Shown here: piece after piece, positions 6,395 to 53,507 of the stretch
Layout: each line of letters opens with the position of its first letter
How positions within the stretch are numbered: the stretch's first letter is position 1
Assembly (NCBI GenBank): GCA_002269645.1
Contig: NIVC01002444.1
Location: 62,001-126,000, forward strand
Reading direction: 5' to 3'
Length of the DNA: 64,000 nucleotides
Origin: Macrostomum lignano
Lineage: Eukaryota
The notes under the pieces: generated by a model
What the model was told of the DNA's origin: nothing
The model's database searches: none
What the model saw: only the letters and a program-made list of their open reading frames with translations
Program-made: the position numbers and the translations under genes

Positions 6395-9300
6395 ATGCCC
6401 GCGGCCTGCTGAGCGATGCCGCCGATCGAGACATCGGCAGCGGAGCCGACAGTAAGGCGACGGCCTCGGCTAGCTCAGATTTTGATGGCATCGGCGACGG
6501 CGAGGAGACCTACACGGTGGAGCATGCAGTTGAGAAGCTGGGATTTGGTCGGTTCCAGCTACGGATTCTGTTCATTTGCGGCATCATGACGGTGAGAGCT
6601 TCGTTGAAAAATCAATATAGTTAGCGAAATCCCGCCCACACAGTCTAGCAAGAGAGCAGAAAGAATTTCCTATGTAGCTACACCGACCAGCTGCTCAAAC
6701 TGCAAAAGTAGCTCTCCTTACAGGACTCACTTTTTTCTGAATTGTTGCAGTTCGCGCACAGACCGTTCGCTTCTTCTACTGGGTATGAAAGTCTCGCGAT
6801 ATTTTAAAAGTTCTTGGCTCAAATTCCTAGTCGACCTCGCTTGCTGCGTCGTATTAGTTGTTAAATAACTGTCATGTGTTGCGAGTTTGCAAGAAATCTT
6901 CATAGTGATGCAATTTGTGTAGCCAGTGTTTCTAGTTACTTATATTCTAAGGCAAAATGTTTAATGCGCTGTGCTTTGAGCTACAGCCTTCAGATGCAAA
7001 TTTTGTAGATACAGATATAAAAGCCAGACACAGACAGTCTGTAGAGGTACATAACCCAGACACAGACAGTCTGTAGAGCTGCAGAACCCAGACACAGACA
7101 GTCTGTTGAGCTACAGAATCCAGACACAGACAGACAATCTGTAGAGCTACAGAACCCAGACACAAACAGTCTGTAGAGCTGCAGAACCCAGACACAGACA
7201 GACAATCTGTAGAGCTACAGAACCCAGATACAGACAGACAGTCTGTAGAGCTACAGAACCCAGATACAGACAGACAATCTGTAGAGCTACAGAACCCAGA
7301 CACAAACAGTCTGTAGAGCTGCAGAACCCAGACACAGACAGACAATCTGTAGAGCTACAGAACCCAGATACAGACAGACAGTCTGTAGAGCTACAGAACC
7401 CAGATACAGACAGACAATCTGTAGAGCTACAGAACCCAGATACAGACAGACAGTCTGTAGAGCTACAGAACCCAGATACAGACAGACAATCTGTAGAGCT
7501 ACAGAACCCAGATACAGACAGACAGTCTGTAGAGCTACAGAACCCAGATACAGACAGACAATCTGTAGAGCTACAGAACCCAGATACAGACAGACAGTCT
7601 GTAGAGCTACAGAAACCAGACACAGACAGTCTGTAGAGCTACAGAACCCAGACAGAGCCCAGACACACTGTCCGCACGCTATTCCCGCTCCGCGCAGGCC
7701 GCGGACGCCATGGAGATGCTGCTTCTCTCTGTACTGGGCCCGGCACTTCGCTGCGACTGGCAGCTCAGCTCCGCCCAGGTGGCCATCATCACCACGGTGG
7801 TGTTTGCGGGCATGTTCGGCGGCGCGCCCGCCTGGGGCGCCGTGTCGGACAAGCACGGCCGGAGAGGCGTGTTCGGCCTGAGCCTGAGCCTCATCGCCTA
7901 TTTCGGCCTGCTATGCTCATTCTCGCCAAGCTTTTTCTGGCTGGTGTCGCTCCGCGGCATGGTTGGATTCTGCATCAGCGGCGCCACCTCATCCTTCACG
8001 CTGCTGTCCGAGTACCTGCCTCAGACCTACAGGGCCAAAGTGCTCATAGCCTACAATGTGTTCTGGGGATTGGGAAGTTCGTTTGAAGTTCTTCTGGCCT
8101 ACATGGTGTTGCCTAACCTGGGATGGCGCTACCTGACTGCCTTCTCTGCCCTGCCGCTCTTCATCTTCATGCTGGCTCTGGGGGTGAGTTCTGTGTTATC
8201 GCCTCTGCAATCACCTCCATCAACTATCTTCCCTACAATCTCCTCCATCAAGAATTATCCCTACAGTCTCCTCCATCAAGAACTATCCCTACAGTCTCCT
8301 CCATCAAGAACTATCCATACAGTCTCCTCCATCAAGAACTATCCATACAGTCTCCTCCATCAAGAACTATCCCTACAATCTCCTCCATCAGGAATCGCCC
8401 CTACAATCTACATTGAGACTCTCCACAATAACCTTGGTGAATCTCCGCAATAACCTTGTAAAATCTCCCCAATAACCTTGAGGAATCTCCCCAATAACCT
8501 TAAGGAATCTCCCCAATAACCTTTTAAAATCTCCACAATAACCTTGGGAAATCTCCCCAATAACCTCGGGGAATCTCCCCAATACCTTGGGGAATCTCCC
8601 CAATAACCTTGGGGAATCTCCCTAATAACCTTAGTGAATTTCCTTAATAACCTTGGAGAATCTCCTCTTTAAATAGAAGAACTGTAAAATGCTACTATCT
8701 CATTGGCTCATTGCTGTTTAGTTCCTGCCTGAATCTGCCCGATACCTGCTGGCTTCCGGGCAGCCTAAGAAGGCGGCCGCTGTCATCGACCAGATTGCCA
8801 GAGACAATCGAAAGCCGCCAATGACTGGCCGGCCTGTGGCCGCCAGCGTCACGGAGGTGAGAATTTTTTTGCTGAAAACTGACATTTTCGTGGGTCTCTA
8901 GATCAGTCTAATTGAGAGGGTTGCCTAACTAAGAGGGTTGCCTAACTAAGAGGGTTGCCCAACTAAGAAGGTTGTCTAATTGAAAAGGTTGCTTGACTAA
9001 GAAGGTTGTCTAACTAAGTGGGTTGTCTAATTGAGAGGTTGCTTAACTAAGAAGGTTGTCTAGCTAAGTGGATTGCCTAATTGAGAGGGTTGCCTAACTA
9101 AGAGGGTTGCCCAACTAAGAAGGTTGTCTAATTGAAAAGGTTGCTTAACTAAGAAGGTTGTCTAGCTAAGTGGATTGCCTAATTGAGAAGGTTGTCTAAC
9201 TAAGTGGGTTGCCTAACCAAGTGGGTTGCCTAATTGAGAAGGTTGCCTAATCAAGTGGATTGCCTAATTGAGAGGGTTGTCTAACCAAGTGGGTTGCCTA

Positions 9301-11114
9301 ACTAAGAGGGTTGCCTAACTAAGAAGGTTGTCTAATTGAAAAGGTTGCTTAACTAAGAAGGTTGTCTAGCTAAGTGGATTGCCTAATTGAGAAGGTTGTC
9401 TAACTAAGTGGATTGCCTAATTGAGAGGGTTGTCTAACCAAGTGGGTTGCCTAATTGAGAGGGTTGCCTAACCAAGTGGGTTGTCTAATTGAAAGGGTTG
9501 TCTAACCAAGAAGGTTGTCTAATTGAGAAGGTTGCCAGACGAAGAGGGTTGCATAAGAGAGTTTCCAGACAAATTAAGAAAGTTCTCAAACTAAGTGAAC
9601 TGTCATTAACTATCTGAATTTAGATCTCTACATATAAAAATCAAAACTCTGTCTGTCTGTGTGTGTGTCTGTGTGTGGACAATTTTGATCGCTATGGACT
9701 CCCAAACCGCTCAACCAAATGACACCAAATTTGACACCCACCCTAAACTCACTACGGAGAATGTCTTAGGCTACCTTTAAATTTCCTAGACTCAAGTCTT
9801 CCTACCTAAAAGTGCAAAAAACTGCTCAAAATGCGCGATTTTTTCACTTAATCCTCCATAGCGCCGCTCCACTTCTACCGATTCTCTTCAAATTTGACAC
9901 ACATAATCTTTAACTATTTTGGCACAATCATGTAAAATTTCGAGTCTCAAAGTTAATCCTGAGCAGTGCTGTGCACTTTTAAAGTTAGGCTGTTTTTCTC
10001 AGCGTAGCAACCACCCCAACCTCCGCCCGCCTGCCTCTCTTTCCCGATCTGGGCCCAGATGTGTAAAAGGGTTTCAAAATTGACTAACTTTCAGCTGCCA
10101 TAAGTTTTCTCCACGTAAAGCGATTGACTTCAAACTTGACACAATTCTTCATTGACTCATTCTCTGTCTAAATGTAAAGTTTCAACTCTGTAACTCAACC
10201 GAAAAAGAAACTGTAAGCATGTGAAGTTTGTCTGCTTTTTCTGTTGTTTGTGCCACTCACTCACTCCACTCATTCCCCCAGAGCCAGACGAAGGGTCAGG
10301 CGATGGGACTGAATGTACATAGCAAATGTACAGTTTTTTGGAATAACTTTATTTATAACCTTCTCTGCACCCCGAGAGTGGAGAGGCTACGTTTAGCCAT
10401 AACAGTTTAGTGAGAAATTCTAACCACTGCCCTCCCCTCTGTATTGGCAAACTCTGCAGCAGTTTAACAGTAGAGATGAGAGAGCAGAGAGCTGCAGATG
10501 AGAGGAGAGAGGAGACAGCAGAGAGGAGAGCAGAGAGGAAAGAGGTGAAAGAGGTGAAAGAAGAGATGAGAGAGCAGAGAGCTGCAGATGAGAGGAGAGA
10601 GGAGACAGCAGAGAGGAGAGCAGAGAGGAAAGAGGTGAAAGAAGAGATGAGAGAGTAAAGGGAAGAGAGAAGAGATAAAGATACATCTCTACATCTCTAA
10701 GGTTGTAGAGATGAGAGAGGTGGAAGGAGAGATGAGAAATGAGAGATGAGAGATAACGGAGAGAGGAGAGTGGAGTGAGAGAAGAGAGGGAGACAGAGTA
10801 TAGAAAAGGGAAGAGAAGAGAAAAGAAGAAAGGAGAAAGGAAAGTGAGGAGTCAAAAGAGGGGAAAGAAAAGAGTACAGAGGAGAGAGGTGAGAGAACAA
10901 ATAAGACAGAGATGCCAGATTAAAGAGGGGGATGAGAGAGCAGAGACGAGAGTGAACAGATAAAAAATTGGAGAGTAGAGAGAACAGAGGAGAGGTTACA
11001 GAGACGAGAGGAGAGAGGAGAGACAAAGGTAGAGAAGTGAGTGAGGAGAGAGGAGAGAAAAGAGGAGAATGGAGAAGGAAGAGAGGAGGAGAGATAAGAG
11101 AGAGAAAGACAGAG

Positions 11115-11175
<61 letters not shown>

Positions 11176-11235
11176 AGGAGAGAGAGAGAGAGAAGGAGAG
11201 AGAGAGAGAGAGAAGGAGAGATAAGAGAGAAAGAC

Positions 11236-11319
<84 letters not shown>

Positions 11320-12971
11320 CAGAGAGAAATGAGAAGAGATAAGAGAGAAAAGATAAAAGAAGAGAAAGGAAAGATGAGAGAGCAAAGACGAGAGAATAGA
11401 GGTGAGGGAAGAGACGAGAGAAGAGGGGAGAGATGAGAGAGTAGAGTAGAGAGTTAAGAGAAGAGAGAAAAGAATAGAAAGGAGAAGGAAGATAAGAGAG
11501 AAGAGGGGGTGAGAGGAGAGGAGAGAGAAAAGAAGAGACAAGAGATGAGATAAGAGAGATGAAAGAGAAGAGAGATGAGGGAAGATACGAGAGAAGAGGG
11601 GAGAGAGGAGAGAGGAGAGACGAGGGACGAGAGAGATGAGAGGAAACAAAGAGACGATAGAAATTTTAAAGGATCCAAGGGACGTAGGGAGAGTCAGGGA
11701 GAGACCAGAGTTTAGCAATATATGTTTTAGAGTCAGACAGACATTGCCTGACATTCTGCGCAGTACCCCAGCCAACAATGTCAATGTTTGCCTCAAACCC
11801 TAATTTTACACGAATGTGCTCCATTTTATGTCTACCTCTATCCTACTAACTATTAACAAGTTTTTGTTTGTGTATGGCCTTAGATTTCAGAATACACGCA
11901 AAAGTAGTTCTGGGGATTGGAATTCCCCGGGTTCAAAATCCGCGGGTTTCAACAGCTTGTCTTTTATAAAAAAACGATTTAAAAAATATCCATCTAGCAA
12001 GCGACAATCTTTCCTTGTGCCTCTGCGTCCGAGGTTTCAGGCTGACCGGGGCACCCTGCTGTCGCTGTTCCACCCCAACTACAGGCGCACCACGCTCACC
12101 CTGTTCTTCATGTGGTTCGGCGTTGCCTTCCTGTACTATGGCATCGTGCTGATTAGCACAGAGATCTTTCAATTTCACAGCGACTGCTACGGTAGCTCCG
12201 AGGTCACCGTAGGTCACAACACCACGGAGATTGTCACTGACGAGTCCTGCTGTCGGAGTCTGCAGCCGGACGATTATAAGGCCATGCTAATCTCTTCGTT
12301 TGGCGAGTTCGTCATCATACCGTTTAATCTGATCACGATTGACGCCCTGGGCAGGCGTTGGACTATGGCTATTAATTATGGACTCACCAGCGTGTTCTTT
12401 GGCCTCACCTATATCTGCGTGCCCAAGGCTGTCACTACAGCTTTTCTGTTCATGATTCGGGCGCATGCGGCTGGCATATTCAATACCATCTATATTTATA
12501 CTGTGGAGGTGCGTTTTCACTGTTTTCTGCTGTCTGTGGCTGCCTGACGAATGGAAACTGCCGTGTCTGCGGGTGATGATCGGAAACTGCCATCTATGAT
12601 GCCTACTAAAAAGTCCAATCCAGTTCGCACCTGCTCAATCTCTCCGCCAGGTGTACCCAACCGTAGTGCGCAGTGTTGGCCTTGGCGTCTGCTCCTCGAT
12701 AGCTCGACTCGGCTCGATGTCGACTCCATTTGTAGCGCAGGTGCTGATGCCGGACGTCAGCGTCCTGCTAGCGTTCTGCGTCTACGTGACCGTTGCCGTG
12801 GCCTGCGCCGTCCTAGCCCTACTGCTGCCGATTGAAACACGCGGTCGCGCGATGCCGCAGGGCTTGGTGGAGGCAGACCCGGACATTGTGGCTTTCAGGG
12901 CCGACAGCGTCGATGGCGAGGGCAGGGGCGCCACGGCAGAGATTCGAATGCAGGGCCGCTCGGAGAACTGA
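6395..12971 (+). CDS. SVOP: Synaptic vesicle 2-related (SVOP-like) MFS transporter, multi-exon; first coding exon uncertain (1535..1631 or 4828..4891)
   Basis: Phase-consistent GT-AG exons 6395..6591, 7698..8183, 8722..8856, 12041..12508, 12651..12971. The joined translation has SVOP/MFS motifs YTVEHAVEKLGFGRFQ, ADAMEMLLLSVL, SDKHGRR, TLLSEYLP, LPESARYL, DALGRR, EVYPTVVRSVGLG and LLPIETRGR. Confidence 0.88.
7021..7660. repeat. ~30-34-bp minisatellite (cagacagacagtctgtagagctacagaaccca)
   Basis: Tandem units in SVOP intron. Confidence 0.92.
8212..8660. repeat. Two abutting arrays: ~25-bp ctccatcaagaactatccctacagt and ~21-22-bp ccccaataaccttggggaatct
   Basis: Tandem units in SVOP intron. Confidence 0.85.
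8905..9545. repeat. 17-bp minisatellite (gggttgcctaactaaga)
   Basis: Tandem variant units. Confidence 0.9.
9625..10410 (+). mobile_element. Non-autonomous Helitron in SVOP intron
   Basis: A|TC 5' end followed by tacatataaaaa and a (TG)n/ctgt tract; internal repeated aaatttgacac motifs; 3' hairpin GGCTA-cgtt-TAGCC (10385-10398) then TTAG|T, a variant of the canonical CTRR end. Confidence 0.6.
10470..11660. repeat. Purine-rich low-complexity tract with (GA)n microsatellite core at ~11120-11315
   Basis: Almost exclusively A/G on the + strand. Confidence 0.92.
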
Positions 12972-13054
12972 AGCTGCCTCGGAATCGTTTATTGAGTGCA
13001 ATCGGCAAATAGTTTAGCAATCATATTGATGAGTCAATCAGGTATCTTAGCCAA

Positions 13055-13848
13055 CTATGCTCCACCAATCAGATAGCTCAGCCAATCAGATAGCTTAGCC
13101 AATCAGACAGCTTAGCCAATCAGATAGCTTAGCCAATCAGATAACTTAGCCAATCAGATAGCTTAGCCAATTAGATAACTTAGCCAATCAGAGTGGTCAG
13201 CCAATCAGATAGCTTAGCCAATCAGACAGCTTAGCCAATCAGATAACTTAGCCAATCAGATAACTTAGCCAATCAGATAGCTTAGCCAATCAGATAACTT
13301 AGCCAATCAGATAACTTAGCCAATCAGATAGCTTAGCCAATCAGATAGCTTAGCCAATCAGACAGCTTAGCCAATCAGACAGCTTAGCCAATCAGATAGC
13401 TTAGCTAATTAGATAACTTAGCCAATCAGATAGCTTAGCCAATCAGATAGCTTAGCTAATTAGATAACTTAGCCAATCAGATAGCTTAGCCAATCAGATA
13501 GCTTAGCCAATCAGACAGCTTAGCCAATCAGATAGCTTAGCCAATTAGATAACTTAGCCAATCAGAGTGGTCAGTCAATCAGATAGCTTAGCCAATCAGA
13601 CAGTTTAGCCAATCAGATAGCTTAGCCAATTAGATAACTTAGCCAATCAGACAGCTTAGCCAATCAGATAGCTTAGCCAATCAGACAGCTTAGCCAATTA
13701 GATAGCTTAGCCAATTAGATAGCTTAGCCAATCAGATAGCTTAGCCAATCAGATAGCTTAGCCAATCAGATAGCTTAGCCAATCAGATAGCTTAGCCAAT
13801 CAGACAGCTTAGCCAATCAGATAGCTTAGCCAATCAGATAGCTTAGCT
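13055..13848. repeat. 17-bp CCAAT-containing minisatellite (agccaatcagatagctt)
   Basis: About 46 units; short related array at 14810-14885. Confidence 0.95.
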
Positions 13849-14556
13849 AAGCATTAGAAACACTGGAAGAGCTTTTCGTATTGTTTTAATCTAAGTCAAA
13901 ACCGTAACAATTATTTCCTAAATGCTCCGTATTGAAACTGTGTGTGCTTTCCTGTCTTAATTAGCTCGGTAGTAATGCTTCATCATTGCCATGTCTGGTT
14001 TTGGTTTACAAATTAAATGTAATTTAGAGCCTGTATCTTATTGGCTATTTAACGGCATTTTTTGATATTACAATGCGCATCTCCATCATATAGATTTACT
14101 CAACTGTTGTATTGATAGTTTAAGCCTGTACTTATTCATTCAAATAGGCTCATTAACTGCTCTCACCTGTTGCATTAATAGCGCTTTTATTCCAAGCCGT
14201 ATATATTGATCTATATTTTGCGTTCTTCCACTCGGCGCATTTTCCGGCTTTTTCTGTTGCGTTTTTTTTCCAGAACTTTGTTGTATTTTTTGATGTAAAC
14301 AATTCCATTATATATCGAGTGGGAGAATTTCAGATTTTATCAGATACTTCTTATATCCACTTTGTAATTCTGCTGTTGTTGCGGTCCAAGCTTCACAACT
14401 ATTTATTGATCAATTTGCGTATTTGACTTTGCGAGAGCTAAGCTTATAAATGTCACTATACATTGTTTGCGCTGCATATTATCTAGTAATTATTATTGCC
14501 ACAGTAAACATGACAGATAGTTTTAACCTTTTCTCCCCCTGATTTGGGGCCTAGGC

Positions 14557-14770
14557 CAGGAGTCGGCAAACTTTTTTTACCTCAAGGACCAGATAAAGAA
14601 TCCAGTTCATGGCTGCGGGCCAGATGAGAGAGGAAATGAGAGGGAAATCGTAGATAGAGATGAGAGACAAACGATAGAAGATAAGAAAGGAAAAGAAGGG
14701 AAAGAAGAGAGGGGAGAGGCAGAGAAATGGGGAAGAAGAGACAGCAACCTTGAGCGGGCCGGATTGCTAT
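14557..14770 (+). mobile_element. Truncated hAT-like MITE fragment
   Basis: Starts CAGGAGTCGGCAAACT and has gcgggcc(a/g)gat internal motifs typical of hAT non-autonomous elements; no matching right TIR seen. Confidence 0.3.
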
Positions 14771-15395
14771 TGTGAAGTTTCAAAGGTCGGATCCTATGCT
14801 CAGCCAATCAGATAGCTCAGCCAATTAGATTGCTCGACTAATTAGATTGCTCAGCCAATTAGATTGCTTAGCCAATCAGATTGCTCTGCCATCTAAATAG
14901 TTTTAGCTTTTGTCTGGCTAAGTTAGAAAACAGGCATCCAAAGTTGAAAGCCTACAGTAACAACGACAGGTTGGACCATAGACAACACGAACAAATTAGA
15001 CACCTAGAGTCGGGTATCCAGACTTCAATTTATGGTCACAGAGCAATTTGTAGCCAAGTTCCGAAAAAAATGTGGGCTGTCTATGGCCAAACCTGTCAAC
15101 CTGTGTTTCTGTAAGTTTACAAATGAATGACCATTACTCATATAGATTGATTTGATGTTGTTTCAATTGTCGTTTTAATGGATCAGTGCGTTGTTGCTGT
15201 TTTTGCTGTTGTTAGGCATCTGTCTGTGACCATTATTTTGTGCTTGACAATTATTGCTTTATGCGATAAGTTTATTAATCTGCCATGCGCATATCAGGTG
15301 TATTGAGTTATTTAAATTAACAAGAATTTGCTTGCCTAACGATGGCATTTGAAAACGAACTGCTTTTTTAAACTAGTTACTGAACATTTTCTGGC

Positions 15396-16160
15396 TGAGA
15401 GTCATTCTGAGAGTGAGGCTGAGAGTCATTCTGAGAGTGAGGCTGAGAGTCATTCTGAGAGTGAGGCTGAGAGTCATTCTGAGAGTGAGGCTGAGAGTGA
15501 GGGAAGAAAGCGGGGAGGAAGGGAGAGTGAGGGAAGAAAGCGGGGAGGAAGGGAGAGTGAGGGAAGAAAGCGGGGAGGAAGGGAGGGTGAGGGAAGAAAG
15601 CGGGGAGGAAGGGAGAGTGAGGGAAGGAAGCGGGGAGGAAGGGAGAGTAAGGGAAGAAAGCGGGGAGGAAGGGAGGGTGAGGGAAGAAAGCGGGGAGGAA
15701 GGGAGAGTGAGGGAAGAAAGCGGGGAGGAAGGGAGAGTGAGGCAAGAAAGCGGGGAGGAAGGGAGAGTGAGGCAAGAAAGCGGGGAGGAAAGGAGAGTGA
15801 GGGAAGAAAGCGGGGAGGAAGGGAGAGTGAGGGAAGGAAGCGGGGAAGAAGGGAGAGTGAGGGAAGAAAGCGGGGAGGAAGGGAGAGTGAGGCAAGAAAG
15901 CGGGGAGGAAGGGAGAGTGAGGGAAGGAAGCGGGGAGGAAGGGAGAGTGAGGGAAGAAAGCGGGGAGGAAGGGAGGGTGAGGGAAGAAAGCGGGGAGGAA
16001 GGGAGAGTGAGGGAAGGAAGCGGGGAGGAAGGGAGAGTGAGGGAGAAAGCGGGGAGGAAGGGAGAGTGAGGGAAGAAAGCGGGGAGGAAGGGAGAGTGAG
16101 GGAAGAAAGCGGGGAGGAAGGGAGAGTGAGGGAGAAAGCGGGGAGGAAGGGAGAGTGAGG
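15396..16160. repeat. Two abutting 30-bp arrays (gagagtcattctgagagtgaggct-type, then gagtgagggaagaaagcggggaggaaggga)
   Basis: Tandem units upstream of the MTLN-like ORF. Confidence 0.92.
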
Positions 16161-16313
16161 GAAGGTAGTCAGGAAGAGAGGCTATGGAAAGGACAGTGGC
16201 GAGCTTACACAGCCATACGCGCAATGATTACAGAGCCGTGGCCAATTTTCAAATTTATGTACCGCGGTCTTCCAGACTTCACACTTGAGCATTAGAGCTG
16301 TAGAAGCAGCAGC

Positions 16314-16583
16314 ATGCGCTGGTGGCGGGTCGCCAGCTACTGCCTGACATTCGGCCTGGGCTTCGCCTGCGGCTACGGAGCCTACGCGGCAAGGCTGCGC
16401 TTTCTGCGCTGGCGGCAGGACCGGCTGGCTAGGAAGCTGGGCTCCGTGCGGGACCAGCTGCGGCGGGCCACGGGCGGCAGCACAGTCGGGGCTGGGGCTG
16501 CGGCGGCCGCGGCCGCGATCAGACGGCGGGCTGACAGCGGCAGCGCTGAAGCCTCTGCGACTGATGGCGGCGAGGTGCTGTAG
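16314..16583 (+). CDS. MTLN: Mitoregulin (MTLN/SMIM37)-like microprotein, 89 aa; may also be exon 1 of a longer fusion
   Basis: Residues 11-52 align without gaps to recalled human mitoregulin (15/42 identical, including F-x2-G-x3-G and LxWRxxRLxxKL). In-frame stop upstream of the ATG; AATAAA at 16689. Confidence 0.65.
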   Translation: MRWWRVASYCLTFGLGFACGYGAYAARLRFLRWRQDRLARKLGSVRDQLRRATGGSTVGAGAAAAAAAIRRRADSGSAEASATDGGEVL

Positions 16584-16761
16584 ATGGATGAACACTGGCG
16601 CACTGACTGACTTTGTATTCCTATTTGTTGCTACTACAGTTGTACAAGCGAAGTACAATATGTTCCCTGTTAGCTGTTTTATGTTTTAAATAAACGATAC
16701 CAATTTTGCTTTGTATTCATTTTGGAACTTGATTCTTAATTTTAATGCTAGGATACAGGAA

Positions 16762-17558
16762 AGTAGATAGTACAGACAGATAGTACAGACAGGTAGATAG
16801 TACAGACAGGTAGATAGTACAGACAGGTAGTACAGACAGGTAGATAGTACAGACAGATAGTACAGACAGGTAGTACAGACAGGTAGTACAGACAGGTAGA
16901 TAATACAGACAGATAGTACAGACAGGTAGATAGTACAGACAGGTAGTACAGACAGGTAGTACAGACAGGTAGATAATACAGACAGATAGTACAGACAGGT
17001 AGATAGTACAGACAGGTAGATAGTACAGACAGGTAGATAGTACAGACAGTAGATAGTACAGATAGGTAGATAGTACAGACAGGTAGATAGTACAGACAGG
17101 TAGATAGTACAGATAGGTAGATAATACAGACAGGTAGATAGTACAGACAGTAGATAGTACAGATAGGTAGATAGTACAGACAGGTAGATAGTACAGACAG
17201 GTAGACAGAGCTGACAGGTAGACAGAGCTGACAGGTAGACAGAGCTGACAGGTAGACAGAGCTGACAGGTAGACAGAGCTGACAGGTAGACAGAGCTGAC
17301 AGGTAAACAGAGCTGACAGGTAGACAGAGCTGACAGGTAGACAGAGCTGACAGGTAGACAGAGCTGACAGGTAAACAGAGCTGACAGGTAAACAGAGCTG
17401 ACAGGTAGACAGAGCTGACAGGTAGACAGAGCTGACAGGTAGACAGAGCTGACAGGTAGACAGAGCTGACAGGTAGACAGAGCTGACAGGTACACAGGGC
17501 TGACAGGTAAACTGAGCTGACAGGTAAACTGAGCTGACAGGTACACAGAGCTGACAGG
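16762..17558. repeat. Two related 17-bp arrays (gtagatagtacagacag; gacaggtagacagagct)
   Basis: Tandem units between the MTLN-like ORF and the cullin-like exon. Confidence 0.93.
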
Positions 17559-17576
17559 TATTAAACCCTTTCAAAG

Positions 17577-18512
17577 GCTCAAGGCGCATCAAAGCAACTG
17601 CCACCGCTCAGCCCGGCCGATGAGCAGCGGCTGCGCCAGCTGACCGCTTACGTCAGCGAGGCTGTTGGCGAGCCGGCCGCAGCTAAAAGCGGAGGAGCAG
17701 CCGGAGTTGCCGCCTCCGCTCGCGCCGAACGCGCGGCTCAGCTGGCGTCTCAGCTGAGCCGGGCCGGCCACTCCGGGCGCCTGCGCGCGCTCGCCGATGA
17801 CGCTCTGGCCGGCGCCAGACGACGCGCCTGCGCCAGTCTGGTCGGCGCCCTTAGCGGCGACTTTCTGCGCGCCGTAGTGGCCGCCTGTCAGCGGCACCGC
17901 CAGTCGGTCAGCTCACTGGAGTCGGCGCTGAAGTTGCGGCTGGCCGACTCGGCCAATGCCGGCATGCGCGAGGAGGTGCTCGGCTTCCGGCCGGTGGCAG
18001 ACGCTCTGGACCAGCTGCTGGCCGAGCTGGTGTCCGCCGAGCCCCGCACCAGCAGCGACGCCGCGCCCGGAGCCAATCGGCTGCGCGCCCTGTGCGACGC
18101 GCTGGCCTCCGTTGGCGCCTTCGACTCGCTGGTCTGGTCGCGACATCTCCGGCCGCGCCTTGCCGCCGAGTTCGCCGTCCTGGCCGAGTCGCTGCTGGCC
18201 GGCGCCGCCGACGCGGCCGCCTACCTGACCGCCGTTCGGGACGCCGCTGAGCGAGTGGCCGGTCGGGCGGCCCGCCGCTATCGGCCTGAGGTGGCATCGG
18301 CGACGAAGGCGCTGGCGGCCGAGGCTCTGGTGCGGGGCCACTGGGCAACCTGCGTGCAGCTGCTGGCTGCCGACCTGCAAGAGGCCAGCGGCGTCGACCC
18401 GCTGGCCAGGCTGTGCCGCTCCCTGCCCGCTGAGTTCGGCGCCACCCAGCTGCTGGCGGAGGCCGCGCTGGCAGCCGGGGTGGCGCTGCCTGACAGTGGG
18501 GGACTGGCCTGA
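17577..18512 (+). CDS. Large Ala/Leu-rich helical exon (311 aa), cullin-repeat-like; probably exon 2 of the gene starting at 16314
   Basis: Very GC-rich open frame from acceptor tttcaaag|GCT (17577) to TGA 18512, 100 codons longer than the ORF track call. First in-frame ATG is only at codon 130, so an upstream exon is needed; a phase-0 donor GAG|gtgctg is available at 16574/16575. Confidence 0.7.
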   Translation, partial: AQGASKQLPPLSPADEQRLRQLTAYVSEAVGEPAAAKSGGAAGVAASARAERAAQLASQLSRAGHSGRLRALADDALAGARRRACASLVGALSGDFLRAVVAACQRHRQSVSSLESALKLRLADSANAGMREEVLGFRPVADALDQLLAELVSAEPRTSSDAAPGANRLRALCDALASVGAFDSLVWSRHLRPRLAAEFAVLAESLLAGAADAAAYLTAVRDAAERVAGRAARRYRPEVASATKALAAEALVRGHWATCVQLLAADLQEASGVDPLARLCRSLPAEFGATQLLAEAALAAGVALPDSGGLA

Positions 18513-18802
18513 TCTGGCTTTGGGGGACTGGCCTGATCTGACAGGGTGGGACTGGCCTGATCTGACAGTGGGGGACTGGCCTGATCTGACAGTGGCGGAC
18601 TGGCCTGATCTGACAGTGGCGGACTGGCCTGATCTGACAGTGGCGGACTGGCCTGATCTGACAGTGCAGGGGACTGGCCTGATCTGACAGTGCAGGGGAC
18701 TGGCCTGATCTGACAGTGGGGGACTGGCCTGATCTGACAGGGTGGGACTGGCCTGATCTGACAGGGTGGGACTGGCCTGACCTGGCAGGGTGGGACTGGC
18801 CT
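18490..18802. repeat. 23-bp minisatellite (ggactggcctgatctgacagtgg) overlapping the stop codon at 18512
   Basis: About 13 units. Confidence 0.9.
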
Positions 18803-19569
18803 AGTTCGTGACTGATTGGGAATTAGATCGGTAGGCTATTAGCTACTCATAACTTTCAGTAGCATAGTAAGCACATCTGTGTCCATTCAGTACTGCCAGC
18901 TCGTACAAATGCTTTTTATACCTACTTTTTCATAGACTGTGATTCCCCAGTTTACTAGCGTGTAAAAAGTGTGCCTTATTCTACTTAAGTCAGTAGTGTG
19001 TTGCGGTGCTTATCAATGAATACTTGCTAATAGCTTTTTGCATTTTTTATCGATGTGGATTGCAGAGTTCTTTTAACAGCTTTTTTACGTAACCGAGAAA
19101 TATTTTATAGAAGTTTATTTCAAATACTTGGAAATTCCGATCTATTTTTTGAGGCCGTTCAATTGACATTCACGTATCAGTGCTCAAAATAGTTTTGTTT
19201 TTTAGACTTTGAAGTAGTCGTTTCTTCAGCAACAATACATTGCCAGTTTAGCCTGAAAGCAGCAGGACTTTATTGTTTATTTATTTATTTGCAAATTTGC
19301 AAATTGACAATAAACCGGGGGTTGCTGGTTTCTACTATCAGTAGTACACTCGGTGCATTATACTTGAACTTCGAGTTCTTCTTCAAAGTTGGTAAACACC
19401 AGGCTGCGGCTGTTGCTGGTATTGGCAGCAACAATGGAAGCCTCGCTATTGATGCCGCGAATGGCGCGCTGCGACTCCGGCTGGCATGACCGGCTGGGGA
19501 GGCGAGTGTGGTGATTGGAAGATTGGCAGCGCGCATTCGAATCCCGTTGCTTGTGGGATAAATTGGCAA

Positions 19570-25500: not shown

Positions 25501-28500
25501 TTTAAACATTTTTTTTCAAATGATGAACTGCCGGAGCTTCATCTATCATTGGCTACGACCAATAAATAATGACATCAATTTTGACTATGACCAATTATGA
25601 CATCAATTTTGACTATGACCAATTATGACAGATCAATTTTGACTATGATCAATTATGACAGATCAATTTTGACTATGACCAATTATGACAGATCAATTTT
25701 GACTATGACCAATTATGACAGATCAATTTTGACTATGACCAATTATGACAGATCAATTTTGACTATGATCAATTATGACATATCAATATTGACTATGACC
25801 AATCTATGACCAATATTGAGTATGAACAATCTATGACCAATATTGACTATGACCACTATATGATCAATACTGACTATGACCACTCTATGATCAATATTGA
25901 GTATGACCACTCAATGATCAATACTGACTATGACCACTCTATGATCAATACTGACTATGACCACTCTATGATCAATACTGACTATGACCACTCTATGATC
26001 AATACTGACTATGACCACTCTATGATCAATACTGACTATGACGCCCTATGATCAATACTGACTACAGCAAGTAGTGCATATATGACCAGTAAAATCCATG
26101 ACTCAGATTGCTTGTCATGCCTGTCACTGCGATGACATGATTATCGATTTTCAATTCCAAAGAGACTGTGCACCATCAGTGCAGTCTGCCCAGCCGAGCT
26201 CACCCAGCTGCTCTTGGCGGCATGTCCGCCGAGTTCTCCTTGGTCTGGTAGGCCGAGTCGCCCAGCCTGGCCTTCACTGGCGTCGGGCAGTCCCGCTCGC
26301 TGCGGCGGTGGCCGCGGTGACGCTGACACCGATTTCGGCTGCTGCTGCAGCTGGAGCGGCAGCTGCCCTGACGGTTGAGCGGCTGCGGCGGCGGCGGCGG
26401 CCCGGCCTGAGGCTTCTGTGTCGGCGCCGACTCAGTCGAAAGCTGCACCTCCGCCGCCGCGCCCGCTGCCGCAGCATCCGTTGCCGTTGCCGCCGCTTCA
26501 GATGTCGGCGACTGCCTAGACGATACGCTGGCAGTGTCGCCGCCGCTCTCCCGCGGATGCTCTGGCCCACCGCCCAAGCATTCGAATCCGAAGTCTTGCG
26601 CGAATTCGTTGTCGTTGTCGTACTCCAGCGCCCGGCGCCTCAGCCGGAGGAGTTGCCGCTGCCGCAGCTGCCTGCCAGCAGCCGGCAGGATCGCCGAGTG
26701 CGACTCGGTGGCGCGGCGGCTCCAGTCCTCCACGTAGATGAAGGTGTCCCCGGCCACGATGGGGGAGCGGCAGTCGCCAGCGACGTCCTCCAGCGAAGGC
26801 GTCGGCGAGGCCAGCCGCGGCGGGCAGAGCTCCGCTGCCGAGGCCGAGGCTGGCGCGGCCGCTGCCCAGGCGCCCTTCGTCGAGTAGGTAGACTTTGCTG
26901 AGGACGCTGCCACCGCCGCTGCCGCCGCCGAGGGCTCCGTCGCAAACGCCGCTGCTGAGGAAATCGGCGGCACGGCCAGCAACATTGGCGGCGGCGGCCG
27001 CGGCTGCGCGGACTCGCACAGCTGGCGGAGCTCCGCCCGGAACCGCTCAAGCCGGCGGTTCGCCAGCTCCTCGACGCGTCCTCTGGCGACGCCGGTATCG
27101 GTGCCGGGGCTGCAGGGCACCGCCGAGACCGACCGGCGCCGACGCCGCTCCCGACCCTGACGTCGGAGCTGCCGGCTGGAGTTGCGGCGCTCGCGCCCGT
27201 CGGCCTGACTTCCCGCCTCCCCCTGCTCCTCCTCCAACTCGTCCGCTGCAGCCGCTTCGGCAGCAGCCGCCTTGGCCGCGGCGCAGCTCATGTCCTCGAT
27301 GGAGTTGCACTTCACCGCCTGGGCACCCTTGGCTCGGGCCTCCGCAGCTGTGGGTTGCTGGGCCAGCAGCCACGAGGCCACCCCGCTGTTGAACTCGCCA
27401 CCGCAGCAGCTGGACGCCGACAGTCGCGGCTGCAAGGCTGGCAGCGGCTCCGCGTCCTCCGCCATCAGGCATCGCCGGCTTCGACTTCTTCGGCGGTGCT
27501 CCCGACCGCAGCTGCTCCCGGCCTCGGCGCCGCCTTCTCCGTGAAACCGCGCCCTCAGCACGAGCACCTCGGCCTGGAATCGACGCCAGCAGCGGCGGCA
27601 GGTGCAACCGGCGGAAGCCTGGCGGACCAGCCGGTCCAACAGTTGACGACGATTCGCCGCCGTCTCCGAGGTGTCCAGCGGGCCTTCAGCTGGCGGTCCG
27701 GGCGCCTCCGCCTCTGCCTCGGCCTCCTCCTGGCAGCAGCGGCGGCAGCGGCGCCCCGGTCTTCGCCGGGAACTTCCGCCGCCGTTCCAGCCTTCGTTAT
27801 CGGCGATGTTCAGTCGTCCAGCATCGCCTGCAGCCGACGACATCGCGGCGAAGTCGATGCAGCTCCTGCTGCCGCCGCAGACGCTACCGCCATGCCCGTC
27901 CCGGCTTCGGCGGTGCCGCCGACTGCGTCGCCGACTCGACGACTCGGCGGCTCCGGTGGCCGCCGTGGCAGCCGACTCGCTGGTGCCCGCGCTGGCCATG
28001 GTGGTCGTGCGGTTCCGCGCGAACGCTCGCCTCTTGCTTGAGCAGCGGCGGCTGCCGGCGCCGCCCTCCTCGCCTGTCGGCGAGTCCACGGTGAACAACA
28101 CGCTGTCCGCCGCGGTCCGCAGCGCCAGCCGGCTGGCCACCTCGTCAGCGAGGGCCCGCATTGCCGCTTCCGCTTCGGCCGCTTCGTCTGCTTCCGCCGC
28201 TGTGACCTCGGATGACCTGACGGCCAAGGGGCTCGAAGCGTGAAACTGCAGAGTCGGCGACTGCTGGATCGGCGACCTGCGGCCAGGGCCTTCGACGTGG
28301 TTGCTGGGAGTGACCTGCGGGAAAAATGTAAAAAAAGATGAACAACTGGCAGTTTGTAATCTGAACAATTCAAAACTGGATAATTGTTCTCGTCAAAATA
28401 CTTTAAATTCGCCATCCGTTCTGACGCAAGATGAAGTTTTCAGCATTAAATCAGACCGAGTGGACTCAGAAATGAGAGTGCACTTTTTATTGCAACTGCA

Positions 28501-51282: not shown

Positions 51283-53507
51283 TTAATCCATGAACTTGCG
51301 GTTGGGATTGCCGCCAAAAAGAATGTAACGCAGCTCGGGCACCATCTGCGCGCTGATCTGCTCCAGACGGCTCTCCAAGTTGTTACACACTCGAATTTTG
51401 CCAGCCCGACCGATTACATCAACGCCGCCAACTGAGTCTGGCGGCAGGAAATTCTGCTTATCAACCTGCAGTTTCACTGGCCGGCCGGTCTCACGCTTGT
51501 ACCGATCGGCTGCCGCGCCCATCACGCGCTCGACTAGGTGAACATCGGCCTGGCGACAGCGGAGCACCGCCTCGGGTTCTAGCAGTTGGAACAGGCCCTG
51601 AGTAACCAGGCCCTCCATTAGCTGGGCGTATCTGGGCGGGCGGGTGTAGTTTATGAGTTTATAGCAAGTCATAGAACAGAGCATTTATACATTGTTATTA
51701 CTATAGATAAGGGTGGATCTGAAGCTCACGCCCCCCCCCCCAAGGCACACAGATCGTACAAGCGTGACGAAGAGAAATTCCGGGCCAAGAAACATCCCAG
51801 AGTCACTTTAATCGTCCCAGAGTCACTTTAATCGTCCCAGAGTCACTTTAATCGTCCCAGAGTCACTTTCATCGTCCCAGAGTCACTTTCATCGTCCCAG
51901 ATGTCACTTTCATCGTCCCAGATGACACTTTCATCGTCCCAGAGTCACTTTCATCGTCCCAGAGTCACTTTCATCGTCCCAGAGTCACTTTCATCGTCCC
52001 AGAGTCACTTTCATCGTCCCAGATGTCACTTTCATCGTCCCAGATGTCACTTTCATCGTCCCAGAGTCACTTTCATCGTCCCAGATTCACTTTCATCGTC
52101 CCAGAGTCACTTTCATCGTCCCAGATGTCACTTTCATCGTCCCAGAGTCACTTTCATCGTCCCAGATGTCACTTTCATCGTCCCAGAGTCACTTTCAGCG
52201 TCCCAGAGTCACTTTCAGCGTCCCAGAGTCACTTTCATCGTCCCAGAGTCACTTTCAGCGTCCCAGAGTCACTTTCATCGTCCCAGAGTCACTTTCATCG
52301 TCCCAGAGTCACTTTCATCGTCCCAGAGTCACTTTCATCGTCCCAGAGTCACTTTCATCGTCCCAGATGTCACTTTCAGCGTCCCAGAGTCACTTTCATC
52401 GTCCCAGAGTCACTTTCATCGTCCCAGAGTCACTTTCATCGTCCCAGAGTCACTTTCAGCGTCCCAGAGTCACTTTCAGCGTCCCAGAGTCACTTTCATC
52501 GTCCCAGAGTCACTTTCAGCGTCCCAGAGTCACTTTCAGCGTCCCAGAGTCACTTTCATCGTCCCAGAGTCACTTTCATCGTCCCAGAGTCACTTTCATC
52601 GTCCCAGAGTCACTTTCAGCGTCCCAGAGTCACTTTCAGCGTCCCAGAGTCACTTTCATCGTCCCAGAGTCACTTTCAGCGTCCCAGAGTCACTTTCAGC
52701 GTCCCAGAGTCACTTTCATCGTCCCAGAGTCACTTTCAGCGTCCCAGAGTCACTTTCATCGTCCCAGAGTCACTTTCATCGTCCCAGAGTCACTTTCATC
52801 GTCCCAGAGTCACTGTCATCGTCCCAGATTTCACGGTAACAAGTCGCCAAAAAGTGGCCTAAGAGTCAATTTGAGGCGTTTTATTGTCCATAGAGTCGTA
52901 TCTGAGGCGTGCTGGAGTCGTTGTAGAATCACTGAGTTGCGTCTAAAGCGCCTCTCTGTTGACCGTCGCATTACAGTCGTTTGAGTCGTTAAAAAGTTGC
53001 AAGAGTTGCCCTTAGAGTCGCTAGAGAGTTGTTTGCAATGACTTTTTTGGCGATTCTTGTCACGGTAATGTTTTCAACGTATTGATTTGGGCCCAAAGTG
53101 TCAAAAACCAACTAACAGGAAAGTTCCATACCAAATTTCAAGCGCAAGCAGTTTACCCAAGCTTACTTTCCCTGGTCCTTGACAATCTCCCGCAGGCGCT
53201 GCGTGGTCTCAGTCAGAACGTCGCGCAGGTGCTGATCGCGCGCCTTCAGCACCCGCAGTCGGCCGTCGTTTTTCATATTGGAGTGCTGAATCTTCTTCTG
53301 CAACTCAGTCTGCTTCTCCTTTTTGCCATAGAATTCTAGGATCTTGACGCGTTCCTGCTGAACTAGACGCGACTTTTCAATGTTGAACTCTTCCTCGGCC
53401 TTGTTGTCAATCTCTTCTTTCTTCTCGTTGGCCTCCTGCTCGATGAAGGCCATCATCTGCTTGATCTGGCGTTCCACATCCGCGTCGCTTAAACCGCTAC
53501 CGGACAT
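51283..53507 (-). CDS. ATP6V1E1: V-type proton ATPase subunit E, 229 aa
   Basis: Exons 53507..53167 and 51631..51283 (phase 2, AA|gtaagc ... cccag|A); motifs [52 protein letters not shown]. Confidence 0.96.
51797..52828. repeat. 20-bp minisatellite (gtcccagagtcactttcatc) in V-ATPase E intron
   Basis: About 51 units. Confidence 0.95.

What the first reader, a model, noticed from the sequence alone, without database searches (positions are those of the whole stretch)
16314..18512. One locus, two products? Mitoregulin-like microprotein versus a spliced mitoregulin-anchor + cullin-repeat-like fusion
Seen: the 89-aa ORF has a phase-0 donor (GAG|gtgctg, 16574/16575) three codons before its TAG, and an AATAAA at 16689. 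A 311-codon GC-rich open exon starts in phase 0 at 17577 and has no in-frame Met for 129 codons. Inference: intronic polyadenylation would give the free microprotein, while splicing would give a ~398-aa protein with a mitoregulin-type membrane anchor carrying a helical scaffold. I know of no mitoregulin fused to another domain.
Basis: partly seen in the sequence, partly recalled or inferred. Interest (0 to 1): 0.8.

Follow-up and report, generated by a model that had tools for sequence, protein, structure and literature searches.

The report
Flatworm two-gene operon, not fusion
This stretch of the flatworm Macrostomum lignano most likely holds two separate genes, a mitoregulin-like microprotein gene and a species-specific helical-protein gene that probably takes its start codon from the trans-spliced leader. 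The proposed fusion protein is unsupported, but the microprotein would be a rare invertebrate mitoregulin candidate.

Summary
The window is Macrostomum lignano DNA. The 89-aa ORF passes Pfam's mitoregulin threshold (31.5 bits against 27). It also beats 4000 composition-matched shuffles against a vertebrate-only profile.

The fusion reading is not supported. GenBank annotates two separate coding sequences. One is a complete 89-aa protein. The other is a 5'-partial 311-aa protein that starts exactly at the AG|G acceptor (17576/17577). That annotation pipeline sets exact mRNA 5' ends from spliced-leader (SL) reads.

The M. lignano SL ends in ATG. Joined at 17577, that ATG is in frame and gives a 312-aa protein. 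This explains the 129 Met-less codons, which still look coding.

An AATAAA at 16689 is followed by a minisatellite and only about 76 unique bases before the acceptor. That fits the published M. lignano operon definition. In parasitic flatworms, cis-splicing into operon-resolving acceptors is very rare, and chimeric gene models at operons are a known artefact. Two old chimeric models of this locus exist.

I saw no RNA reads, so a minor fusion isoform is not excluded (about 8%). The 311-aa protein has no homologue outside M. lignano, and its cullin likeness is inconclusive. The main point of interest is a candidate invertebrate mitoregulin.

The parts
16165..16313 (+). Unique 149-bp stretch between the 30-bp minisatellite and the ATG. 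Presumed promoter or 5' UTR of the microprotein gene, or an outron if that gene is also trans-spliced. Contains CCAAT at about 16243 and AG acceptor-like sites at 16295, 16303, 16309 and 16312.
   Evidence: Sequence. Tandem repeat limits. The function is inferred and was not tested.
16314..16583 (+). Mitoregulin-like microprotein CDS, 89 aa. It has an N-terminal hydrophobic segment (about residues 5-26), a basic helix with the pattern RLRFLRWRQDRLARKL, and a 37-aa Ala/Gly/Ser-rich tail.
   Evidence: ORF. (PF22002, 31.5 bits, gathering score 27, E 1.7e-7, residues 10-49). (20.4 bits against a vertebrate-only HMM; best of 4000 shuffles 13.4). (annotated as an 89-aa complete CDS with PF22002).
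16575..16580 (+).
   Evidence: It does not match the M. lignano donor consensus GT[G/A]AG. A neighbouring real intron does use GAG|GTGCGT. Two old chimeric gene models use this same donor.
16689..16694 (+). AATAAA poly(A) signal of the microprotein gene, followed by a T/GT-rich stretch (16700-16725).
   Evidence: It is the only + strand AATAAA between 5166 and 19309.
16754..17560 (.). Minisatellite with 13/17/34-bp units (GACAGGTAGACAGAGCT and relatives) that fills the intercistronic gap. It contains dozens of CAG|GTA donor-like motifs.
   Evidence: Repeats are reported to inflate intergenic distances in M. lignano operons.
17562..17576 (+). In-frame TAA (17562-17564), then the acceptor CCCTTTCAAAG| ending in AG at 17575-17576. 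This is the proposed spliced-leader trans-splice site.
   Evidence: The annotated 5'-partial CDS starts at the next base. It is an AAG acceptor, not the consensus [T/C]TNCAG.
17577..18512 (+). Single-exon CDS of an orphan all-helical protein. It is 311 codons as annotated (PAA87252.1-type, 'partial') and 312 aa if the leader's AUG is the start.
   Evidence: annotation. (periodicity). (SL + exon gives an in-frame 312-aa product; low divergence). (no homologues). (all-helical, pLDDT 54).
18490..18802 (.). 24-bp minisatellite. Its first unit supplies the last seven codons and the TGA stop of the 311-aa ORF, and the rest lies in the 3' UTR.
19309..19314 (+). Next + strand AATAAA, the presumed poly(A) signal of the second gene (3' UTR of about 800 nt).
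   Evidence: Its use is inferred.

Best explanation
The locus holds two same-strand genes of Macrostomum lignano that are probably transcribed as one precursor RNA (an operon) and resolved into two mRNAs.

Gene 1 (16314-16583) encodes an 89-aa mitoregulin-like, single-pass membrane microprotein. Its mRNA ends by cleavage and polyadenylation shortly after AATAAA 16689.

The downstream RNA is an outron made mostly of minisatellite. It is removed when the 35-nt spliced leader (...TTGCATG) is trans-spliced onto the acceptor at 17576/17577. The leader's 3'-terminal AUG then sits directly in frame (AUG|GCU CAA GGC...). It serves as the initiator for a 312-aa, lineage-specific, all-helical protein, whose mRNA ends after AATAAA 19309.

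The apparent in-frame donor/acceptor pair that suggests a 398-aa fusion is a coincidence. It is the same kind of coincidence that makes gene finders build chimeric models at flatworm operons.

Shown: the sequence features, the Pfam membership, the coding signal in the Met-less part, the separate annotated CDSs, and the in-frame leader AUG. Inferred: that SL reads actually map at 17577, that the two genes share one precursor RNA, and that the leader AUG is the start that is used.
For: - Organism and annotation: the 311-aa product equals GenBank 'hypothetical protein BOX15_Mlig017727g2, partial' on the sister contig (one residue different). It is called as a single-exon CDS starting exactly at 17577. 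The 89-aa ORF is a separate complete CDS.
- Exact 5' end: that annotation cuts transcripts at spliced-leader read peaks and poly(A) reads, and calls ORFs with TransDecoder. A 5'-partial ORF starting at 17577, with an in-frame TAA at 17562, requires an mRNA 5' end at 17575-17577. That is exactly at AG|G.
- Leader sequence: the M. lignano SL is CGGTCTCTTACTGCGAAGACTCAATTTATTGCATG. Its final ATG is regarded as a likely start codon in Macrostomum. The flatworm SL AUG is a documented initiator.
- Frame: SL + exon gives a 312-aa ORF from the leader's only ATG.
- Coding signal: the first 128 of the 129 Met-less codons show the same codon periodicity as the rest. The first 384 nt (128 codons) have no differences between the two copies (P=0.02).
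- Spacing: only 60 + 16 unique bases lie between AATAAA and the acceptor once the minisatellite is subtracted, and 883 bases raw. Both are under the published 1-kb operon threshold, whose mode is about 100 bp.
- Poly(A) signals: each ORF is followed by one of the only two + strand AATAAA in 19 kb.
- Flatworm precedent: operon-resolving acceptors show the lowest cis-splicing, fusion is described as 'very rare', and chimeric models affect 21% of predicted operons.
Against: - I saw no RNA reads. SL usage at 17577 is inferred from the annotation's boundary.
- The acceptor is AAG, not the enriched [T/C]TNCAG.
- The suffix 'g2' is ambiguous, because the name prefix is shared by 95%-identical copies. 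It does not prove co-transcription.
- The minisatellite holds many CAG|GTA donor-like motifs upstream of the acceptor. In principle these could make the gap an intron rather than an outron.
- The evidence that operon acceptors resist cis-splicing comes from parasitic flatworms, not from Macrostomum.
Confidence: 0.72

Rival explanations
1. The same primary transcript yields either the free microprotein (polyadenylation at 16689) or, by cis-splicing 16574 to 17577, a 398-aa protein in which the mitoregulin-type membrane anchor carries the helical domain.
For: - The donor and acceptor are both in phase 0, and the product is an uninterrupted 398 aa.
- The fusion would also explain the 129 Met-less coding codons.
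- A GTGC-type donor (GAG|GTGCGT) is used in the neighbouring transporter gene.
- A 1002-nt intron is typical for M. lignano, whose mean is 1,114 nt.
- Two older gene models (P0003, P0005) use the same donor.
- Flatworm acceptors can in general be shared between cis- and trans-splicing.
- The Ala/Gly/Ser-rich tail of the microprotein would make a plausible linker (inference).
Against: - The transcript-based GenBank annotation has two separate CDSs and no exon upstream of 17577.
- STAR mapping in that pipeline would have recorded an abundant junction.
- Four of six GTs in the ORF are phase 0, so frame compatibility is expected by chance.
- The donor lacks the +4A/+5G of the consensus, and the acceptor is AAG.
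- The two old models disagree on the acceptor (17640 and 17584). They are gross chimeras that chain a transporter, the microprotein, this exon and downstream repeats.
- Cis-splicing into operon-resolving acceptors is very rare in the flatworms studied.
- No known mitoregulin carries another domain. Longer database entries are N-terminally extended 'low quality' models.
- The exact 398-aa sequence is absent from a collection of 15 billion proteins, although the 312-aa form is absent too.
Confidence: 0.08
2. The second gene is SL trans-spliced or independently transcribed, but translation starts at the first genomic AUG (Met130). This gives a 182-aa protein, and the upstream 129 codons are a 5' UTR that is open by chance.
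For: - GC-rich DNA gives long open frames by chance (5% of shuffles).
- In Schistosoma the leader AUG is in frame with only about 28% of trans-spliced mRNAs, close to chance.
- A GTG-started 211-aa sub-ORF is also listed.
Against: - The Met-less part (first 128 codons measured) has coding-type periodicity of GC1/2/3 0.80/0.62/0.74, like the rest.
- It has no differences between the two copies, against 1% in unique non-coding flanks.
- An in-frame leader AUG at the very 5' end, with G at +4, would be met first by scanning ribosomes (inference from the scanning model).
- The frame closes only four codons upstream of the acceptor.
Confidence: 0.1
3. The exon at 17577 is cis-spliced to some other, unannotated upstream exon (not the microprotein ORF) that supplies the start codon. 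Alternatively, the block is not protein-coding at all.
For: - The annotation calls the CDS 'partial'.
- There are no homologues outside the species.
- The structure model is of low confidence.
- Repeat-rich flanks could hide an exon from read mapping.
Against: - No upstream exon appears in the transcript-based model.
- The interval 16584-17576 is 3' UTR plus minisatellite with no GC-rich coding island.
- Periodicity and low divergence argue for coding.
Confidence: 0.07

Closest known systems
SL-resolved operons of Macrostomum lignano (Ustyantsev & Berezikov 2021, PMC8629364; Wudarski et al. 2017, PMC5730564)
   Same: Two same-strand genes. The upstream gene has its own poly(A) signal. The downstream gene starts at a splice acceptor. 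The gap is filled by simple repeats, and the repeat-adjusted distance is about 76 bp, against a published mode of about 100 bp and a threshold of 1 kb.
   Different: The acceptor is AAG rather than the enriched [T/C]TNCAG. SL reads at this site were not seen here. Whether the first gene is itself trans-spliced is unknown.
[quoted passage not shown] 2006, as cited in PMC9851317 and PMC12582326; 'slORFs')
   Same: The leader ends in AUG. The acceptor is in phase 0 with a long ORF that has no AUG of its own for 129 codons, so the leader AUG is needed to translate the coding-looking N-terminus.
   Different: The documented cases are from Schistosoma mansoni. For M. lignano the ATG is only noted as a likely start codon (PMC10468722). 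No translation data exist for this gene.
Vertebrate mitoregulin (MTLN / LINC00116 / SMIM37, Pfam PF22002)
   Same: Small protein with an N-terminal transmembrane segment followed by a basic helix. It shows 35% identity to human MTLN over the core, with 18 identical positions including F..G...G..A...R.R.L.WR..RL..KL. It scores above Pfam's gathering threshold.
   Different: It is 89 aa rather than 56-60 aa, with an extra 37-aa low-complexity tail. It comes from a flatworm, whereas the family is regarded as vertebrate-only (PMC11920140). Localisation and function are untested, and convergence of a short TM-plus-basic-helix motif is not excluded.
Chimeric gene models at flatworm operons (PMC12582326)
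   Same: The old models UPI0007A2C9F1 (1950 aa) and P0005 (739 aa) chain the upstream transporter, the microprotein ORF and this exon through predicted introns, as described for operon loci.
   Different: That cannot be excluded without reads.
Cullin repeats / CATCHR-type helical rods
   Same: All-helical prediction of 14 helices. The top Foldseek PDB hits are the N-terminal domains of CUL4A, CUL3, CUL2, CUL1 and CUL5, and Sec10 and Tip20 also appear.
   Different: Best E is 4.6e-3, TM-score 0.28-0.34 and rmsd 12-16 A, from a model with pLDDT 54. There is no Pfam Cullin hit, no PDB sequence hit and no internal repeat. The resemblance is no more than a generic helical rod.

Membership tests
Mitoregulin (Pfam PF22002 MTLN) | Scores at or above the family's curated gathering threshold | tested here: met
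   31.5 bits against a threshold of 27, E 1.7e-7, residues 10-49 on profile positions 14-53 of 56. PF22002 is also precomputed for the annotated protein.
Mitoregulin (Pfam PF22002 MTLN) | The match is more than composition (a TM segment plus an Arg-rich helix) | tested here: met
   An HMM built only from 55 vertebrate MTLNs scores 20.4 bits. The best of 2000 full shuffles is 10.5 and the best of 2000 segment-preserving shuffles is 13.4. No other ORF among 625 window ORFs scores comparably.
Mitoregulin (Pfam PF22002 MTLN) | Microprotein architecture: one N-terminal TM segment, a basic C-terminal helix and no other domain | tested here: met
The flatworm protein has an extra 37-aa low-complexity tail.
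Mitoregulin (Pfam PF22002 MTLN) | Mitochondrial membrane localisation and a role in lipid or respiratory metabolism | not testable with these tools
   Needs tagged expression or knock-down in M. lignano.
Mitoregulin (Pfam PF22002 MTLN) | Orthology supported by intermediates in other invertebrates | tested here: inconclusive
   A profile search returned 129 hits. The 120 listed are this protein plus vertebrate or unnamed entries, and no named invertebrate appears. The single-sequence search found only itself. The word-index search is insensitive for such short proteins.
SL-resolved operon (M. lignano definition, PMC8629364) | Adjacent genes on the same strand with no opposite-strand gene between them | tested here: met
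   (called genes).
SL-resolved operon (M. lignano definition, PMC8629364) | Repeat-adjusted intergenic distance under 1 kb | tested here: met
   883 nt from AATAAA to the acceptor, of which 807 nt are minisatellite, leaving about 76 nt unique.
SL-resolved operon (M. lignano definition, PMC8629364) | The downstream gene carries the spliced leader | tested here: inconclusive
   Inferred from the annotated 5'-partial CDS starting exactly at AG|G, in a pipeline that sets exact 5' ends from SL reads. Supplement searches for the gene id found nothing.
SL-AUG-initiated ORF (slORF) | The leader ends in AUG, and the acceptor puts it in frame with the main ORF | tested here: met
   SL sequence from PMC8629364. 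SL + 17577 exon gives a 312-aa ORF from the leader's only ATG.
SL-AUG-initiated ORF (slORF) | The ORF needs that AUG: no in-frame genomic AUG near the 5' end, and the region upstream of the first AUG is coding | tested here: met
   The first Met is residue 130. Periodicity of the first 128 of the Met-less codons is shown. There are no differences in 384 nt between the two copies.
SL-AUG-initiated ORF (slORF) | Translation from the leader AUG is observed | not testable with these tools
   Needs ribosome profiling or N-terminal proteomics.
CAG) | tested here: not met
   The donor is GTGCTG and the acceptor AAG. This is not decisive, because a neighbouring real intron uses GTGCGT.
   The annotation has separate CDSs. 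The exact 398-aa sequences are absent from the protein collection. The only junction-like records are chimeric ab initio models that use other acceptors. RNA reads could not be examined.
Cullin repeat | Sequence or structural match to cullin N-terminal repeats | tested here: inconclusive
   No Pfam hit at E<=1. No PDB sequence hit. Foldseek's top hits are cullins, but E>=4.6e-3 and TM<=0.34, from a model with pLDDT 54. No internal repeat.

The most novel reading that the evidence does not exclude
The acceptor at 17577 might be used in two ways. Mostly it would receive the spliced leader. A regulated fraction of precursors that escape polyadenylation at 16689 would be cis-spliced from GAG|GTGCTG. 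This would tether the orphan helical protein to a membrane through a genuine invertebrate mitoregulin anchor. An operon would then double as an alternative fusion gene, and mitoregulin would be older than vertebrates.
Probability: 0.07. Interest if true: 0.65.

Novelty: new member of a known kind. Interest (0 to 1): 0.3.

Why it matters
For genome scanning, this is a worked example of a trap. In flatworms, a GC-rich exon that opens in phase 0 at an acceptor and lacks a Met is the expected signature of a gene whose start codon comes from the spliced leader. An in-frame GT in the upstream cistron invites a false fusion.

The locus has two modest points of value:
- It is a clear candidate for a leader-AUG-dependent ORF in M. 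lignano, where this has only been presumed.
- The upstream ORF is a credible mitoregulin relative in a flatworm, although reviews state that invertebrates are believed to lack the gene. If it is a true homologue that localises to mitochondria, the microprotein's origin moves back to early bilaterians, in an animal where transgenesis and RNAi are available.

Tried and rejected
- Homology of the 311-aa product: the word-index search found only itself. The full HMMER scan of 1.84 billion representatives found only itself and an error-ridden model of the same locus. There was no Pfam hit and no PDB sequence hit. It is therefore an orphan, and its function cannot be assigned.
- Structure: single-sequence AlphaFold2 gave pLDDT 54. 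The Foldseek hits to cullins are too weak to use. The two halves of the protein are not similar to each other.
- Constraint from the second genomic copy (L001): the copies are 98-99.5% identical throughout, including the donor, AATAAA and acceptor. Conservation of the signals is therefore uninformative. Only a coarse divergence contrast could be drawn.
- Direct record of either product: exact look-ups of the 312-aa (SL-Met), 398-aa (fusion) and 182-aa (Met130) forms of both copies were all absent. This is uninformative in both directions.
- Gene id in supplements: four M. lignano papers held no mention.
- The 'g2' suffix as proof of a second cistron: rejected, because name prefixes are shared among 95%-identical transcriptional units.
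- An SL RNA gene or any Rfam family in the window: none.
- Splice-site motifs as a discriminator: rejected, because a neighbouring bona fide intron uses a GTGC donor.
Full report
**What is there.** The window is Macrostomum lignano genomic DNA. The 311-aa translation of 17577-18512 is identical to a GenBank protein on contig NIVC01002444.1. It differs by one residue from PAA87252.1, 'hypothetical protein BOX15_Mlig017727g2, partial', on contig NIVC01000240.1. The region is typical of this genome, with GC-rich coding islands between minisatellites. Arrays lie at 15393-16164, 16754-17560, 18490-18802 and from 19656 onward.

An MFS/sugar-transporter gene lies upstream on the same strand. Its last exons are at 7699-12908 and its annotated end is near 12971.

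**Check of the observation.**
- An 89-aa ORF runs from 16314 to 16583.
- GAG|GTGCTG lies at 16574/16575 in phase 0, followed by two sense codons and then TAG.
- AATAAA is at 16689.
- A frame opens after TAA 17562-17564, has AG|G at 17576/17577, and runs 311 codons to TGA 18510-18512.
- The first in-frame Met is residue 130.
- Joining the two pieces gives 398 aa.

Some of this is not beyond chance. Four of the six GTs in the small ORF are in phase 0. About 5% of shuffles of the GC-rich block hold an open frame this long.

Other evidence shows the block is coding. Codon periodicity is strong (GC1/2/3 = 0.82/0.59/0.82), and it holds in the first 128 of the Met-less codons (0.80/0.62/0.74). The exon differs at 1 of 936 bases between the two genomic copies, against 12 of 1188 in unique non-coding flanks (p=0.009). 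There is no difference in the first 384 bases (P=0.02).

**The microprotein.** The 89-aa ORF scores 31.5 bits on Pfam PF22002 (mitoregulin), above the curated threshold of 27. A profile I built from 55 vertebrate mitoregulins alone scores it at 20.4 bits. The best of 4000 composition- or segment-preserving shuffles reaches 13.4, and no other ORF among 625 in the window scores comparably. Aligned with human MTLN it shares 18 positions across the transmembrane segment and the basic helix.

All named relatives found are vertebrate proteins, typically 56-60 aa. The longer entries are N-terminally extended 'low quality' models, not fusions.

**The second ORF and how it gets a start codon.** The published annotation of this assembly is transcript-based. 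Transcriptional units are cut into mRNAs at peaks of spliced-leader-containing reads and at poly(A) reads, and ORFs are then called with TransDecoder.

A 5'-partial ORF can be called only if the frame is open to the transcript's first bases. An in-frame TAA sits at 17562-17564 and the CDS starts at 17577. The annotated mRNA must therefore begin at 17575-17577, exactly at the AG|G acceptor, with no upstream exon.

The M. lignano spliced leader is CGGTCTCTTACTGCGAAGACTCAATTTATTGCATG. Its terminal ATG is considered a likely translation start in Macrostomum. In flatworms the leader AUG is a documented initiator for mRNAs that lack their own. Placed on 17577, the leader's only ATG is in frame and gives MAQGASK..., 312 aa.

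This accounts for the 'partial' label, for the phase-0 opening at the acceptor, and for 129 coding-looking codons without a Met.

**Operon arrangement.** From AATAAA (16689-16694) to the acceptor is 883 bases, of which 807 are minisatellite. About 76 unique bases remain. Ustyantsev and Berezikov define M. lignano operons by a repeat-adjusted distance under 1 kb to a trans-spliced downstream gene, with a mode near 100 bp. They note that repeats inflate these gaps, and that 18% of operons start with a non-trans-spliced gene.

Between 5166 and 24007 the + strand has only two AATAAA copies. One follows each ORF, at 16689 and 19309.

**Why the fusion is unlikely.**
- The annotation holds two separate CDSs.
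- The donor GTGCTG and the acceptor AAG both miss the species' consensus. A neighbouring real intron does use GAG|GTGCGT, so motifs alone cannot exclude the fusion.
- A 2025 survey of 24 parasitic flatworms found that operon-resolving acceptors have the lowest cis-splicing, and that fusion with the upstream cistron is 'very rare'. Gene finders nevertheless produce chimeric models at about 21% of predicted operons.
- This locus has two such legacy models. One is a 1950-aa chain of transporter, microprotein, this exon and downstream repeat translations. The other is a 739-aa frameshift-ridden version.

I could not inspect reads, so a low-level or regulated fusion isoform remains possible. I put it near 8%.

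**What the 311/312-aa protein is.** It is an orphan.
- There is no homologue outside M. lignano in two very large searches.
- There is no Pfam or PDB sequence match.
- There is no internal repeat.
- The single-sequence AlphaFold2 model is all-helical but of low confidence (pLDDT 54).
- Foldseek ranks cullin N-terminal domains first, but with E>=4.6e-3, TM 0.28-0.34 and rmsd 12-16 A. Other helical rods (14-3-3, spectrin, Sec10, Tip20) appear alongside.

'Cullin-repeat-like' is therefore not established.

**Verdict.** The fusion is not supported. The best explanation is a two-gene, spliced-leader-resolved operon whose second cistron borrows the leader's AUG (confidence about 0.7). The mechanism is a known kind, and the locus is a new instance of it. 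The candidate invertebrate mitoregulin is the item worth following up.

Noticed in passing
window 16314-16583: The ORF passes Pfam's mitoregulin threshold in a flatworm, although a 2025 review says invertebrates are believed to lack the gene. It is either a deep homologue or a striking convergence of a TM-plus-basic-helix microprotein.
   Followed up: partly
window 19309-19520: 74 nt after the second AATAAA (19309) there is another TTCTTCAAAG| acceptor-like site (19388/19389), resembling CCTTTCAAAG| at 17577. With the leader AUG in frame it would open a 42-aa ORF (M+LVNTRLRLLLVLAATMEASLL...RRVW*) in a small GC-rich island. This could be a third cistron, and no gene is annotated there.
   Followed up: no
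window 18490-18512: The last seven codons and the TGA stop of the 311-aa ORF are supplied by the first unit of the 24-bp minisatellite. The repeat defines the protein's C-terminus.
   Followed up: no
window 16754-17560: The intercistronic minisatellite carries dozens of CAG|GTAGAC and CAG|GTAAAC motifs that look like better splice donors than the proposed GTGCTG, yet they lie in a presumed outron.
   Followed up: no
window 16290-16313: Several AG acceptor-like sites lie just upstream of the microprotein ATG. One (TTAG|AGC at 16295/16296) would put a leader AUG in frame, six codons upstream of the genomic ATG. The old chimeric model splices into exactly this site. Whether the first gene is itself trans-spliced is unknown.
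   Followed up: no
window 12971-16689: The upstream MFS-transporter gene ends near 12971, but no + strand AATAAA occurs before 16689. Only variants are present (ATTAAA 14012, TATAAA 14445, AGTAAA 14503). Its 3' end, and whether it belongs to the same transcription unit, are unclear.
   Followed up: no
L001 (NIVC01000240.1:184471-205406) vs window 7577-28512: A second genomic copy of the whole transporter-microprotein-orphan locus is 98-99.5% identical in unique sequence. It differs mainly in minisatellite copy number, consistent with the known recent duplication in M. lignano.
   Followed up: partly
window 61496-62932 (-) and 51901-52839 (+): Other genes in the window: an epoxide hydrolase (EHN + alpha/beta hydrolase domains) on the minus strand, and an ORF with a Vma22/CCDC115 match. 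The 722-aa ORF at 26200-28368 (-), in 70% GC DNA, has no Pfam match.
   Followed up: no
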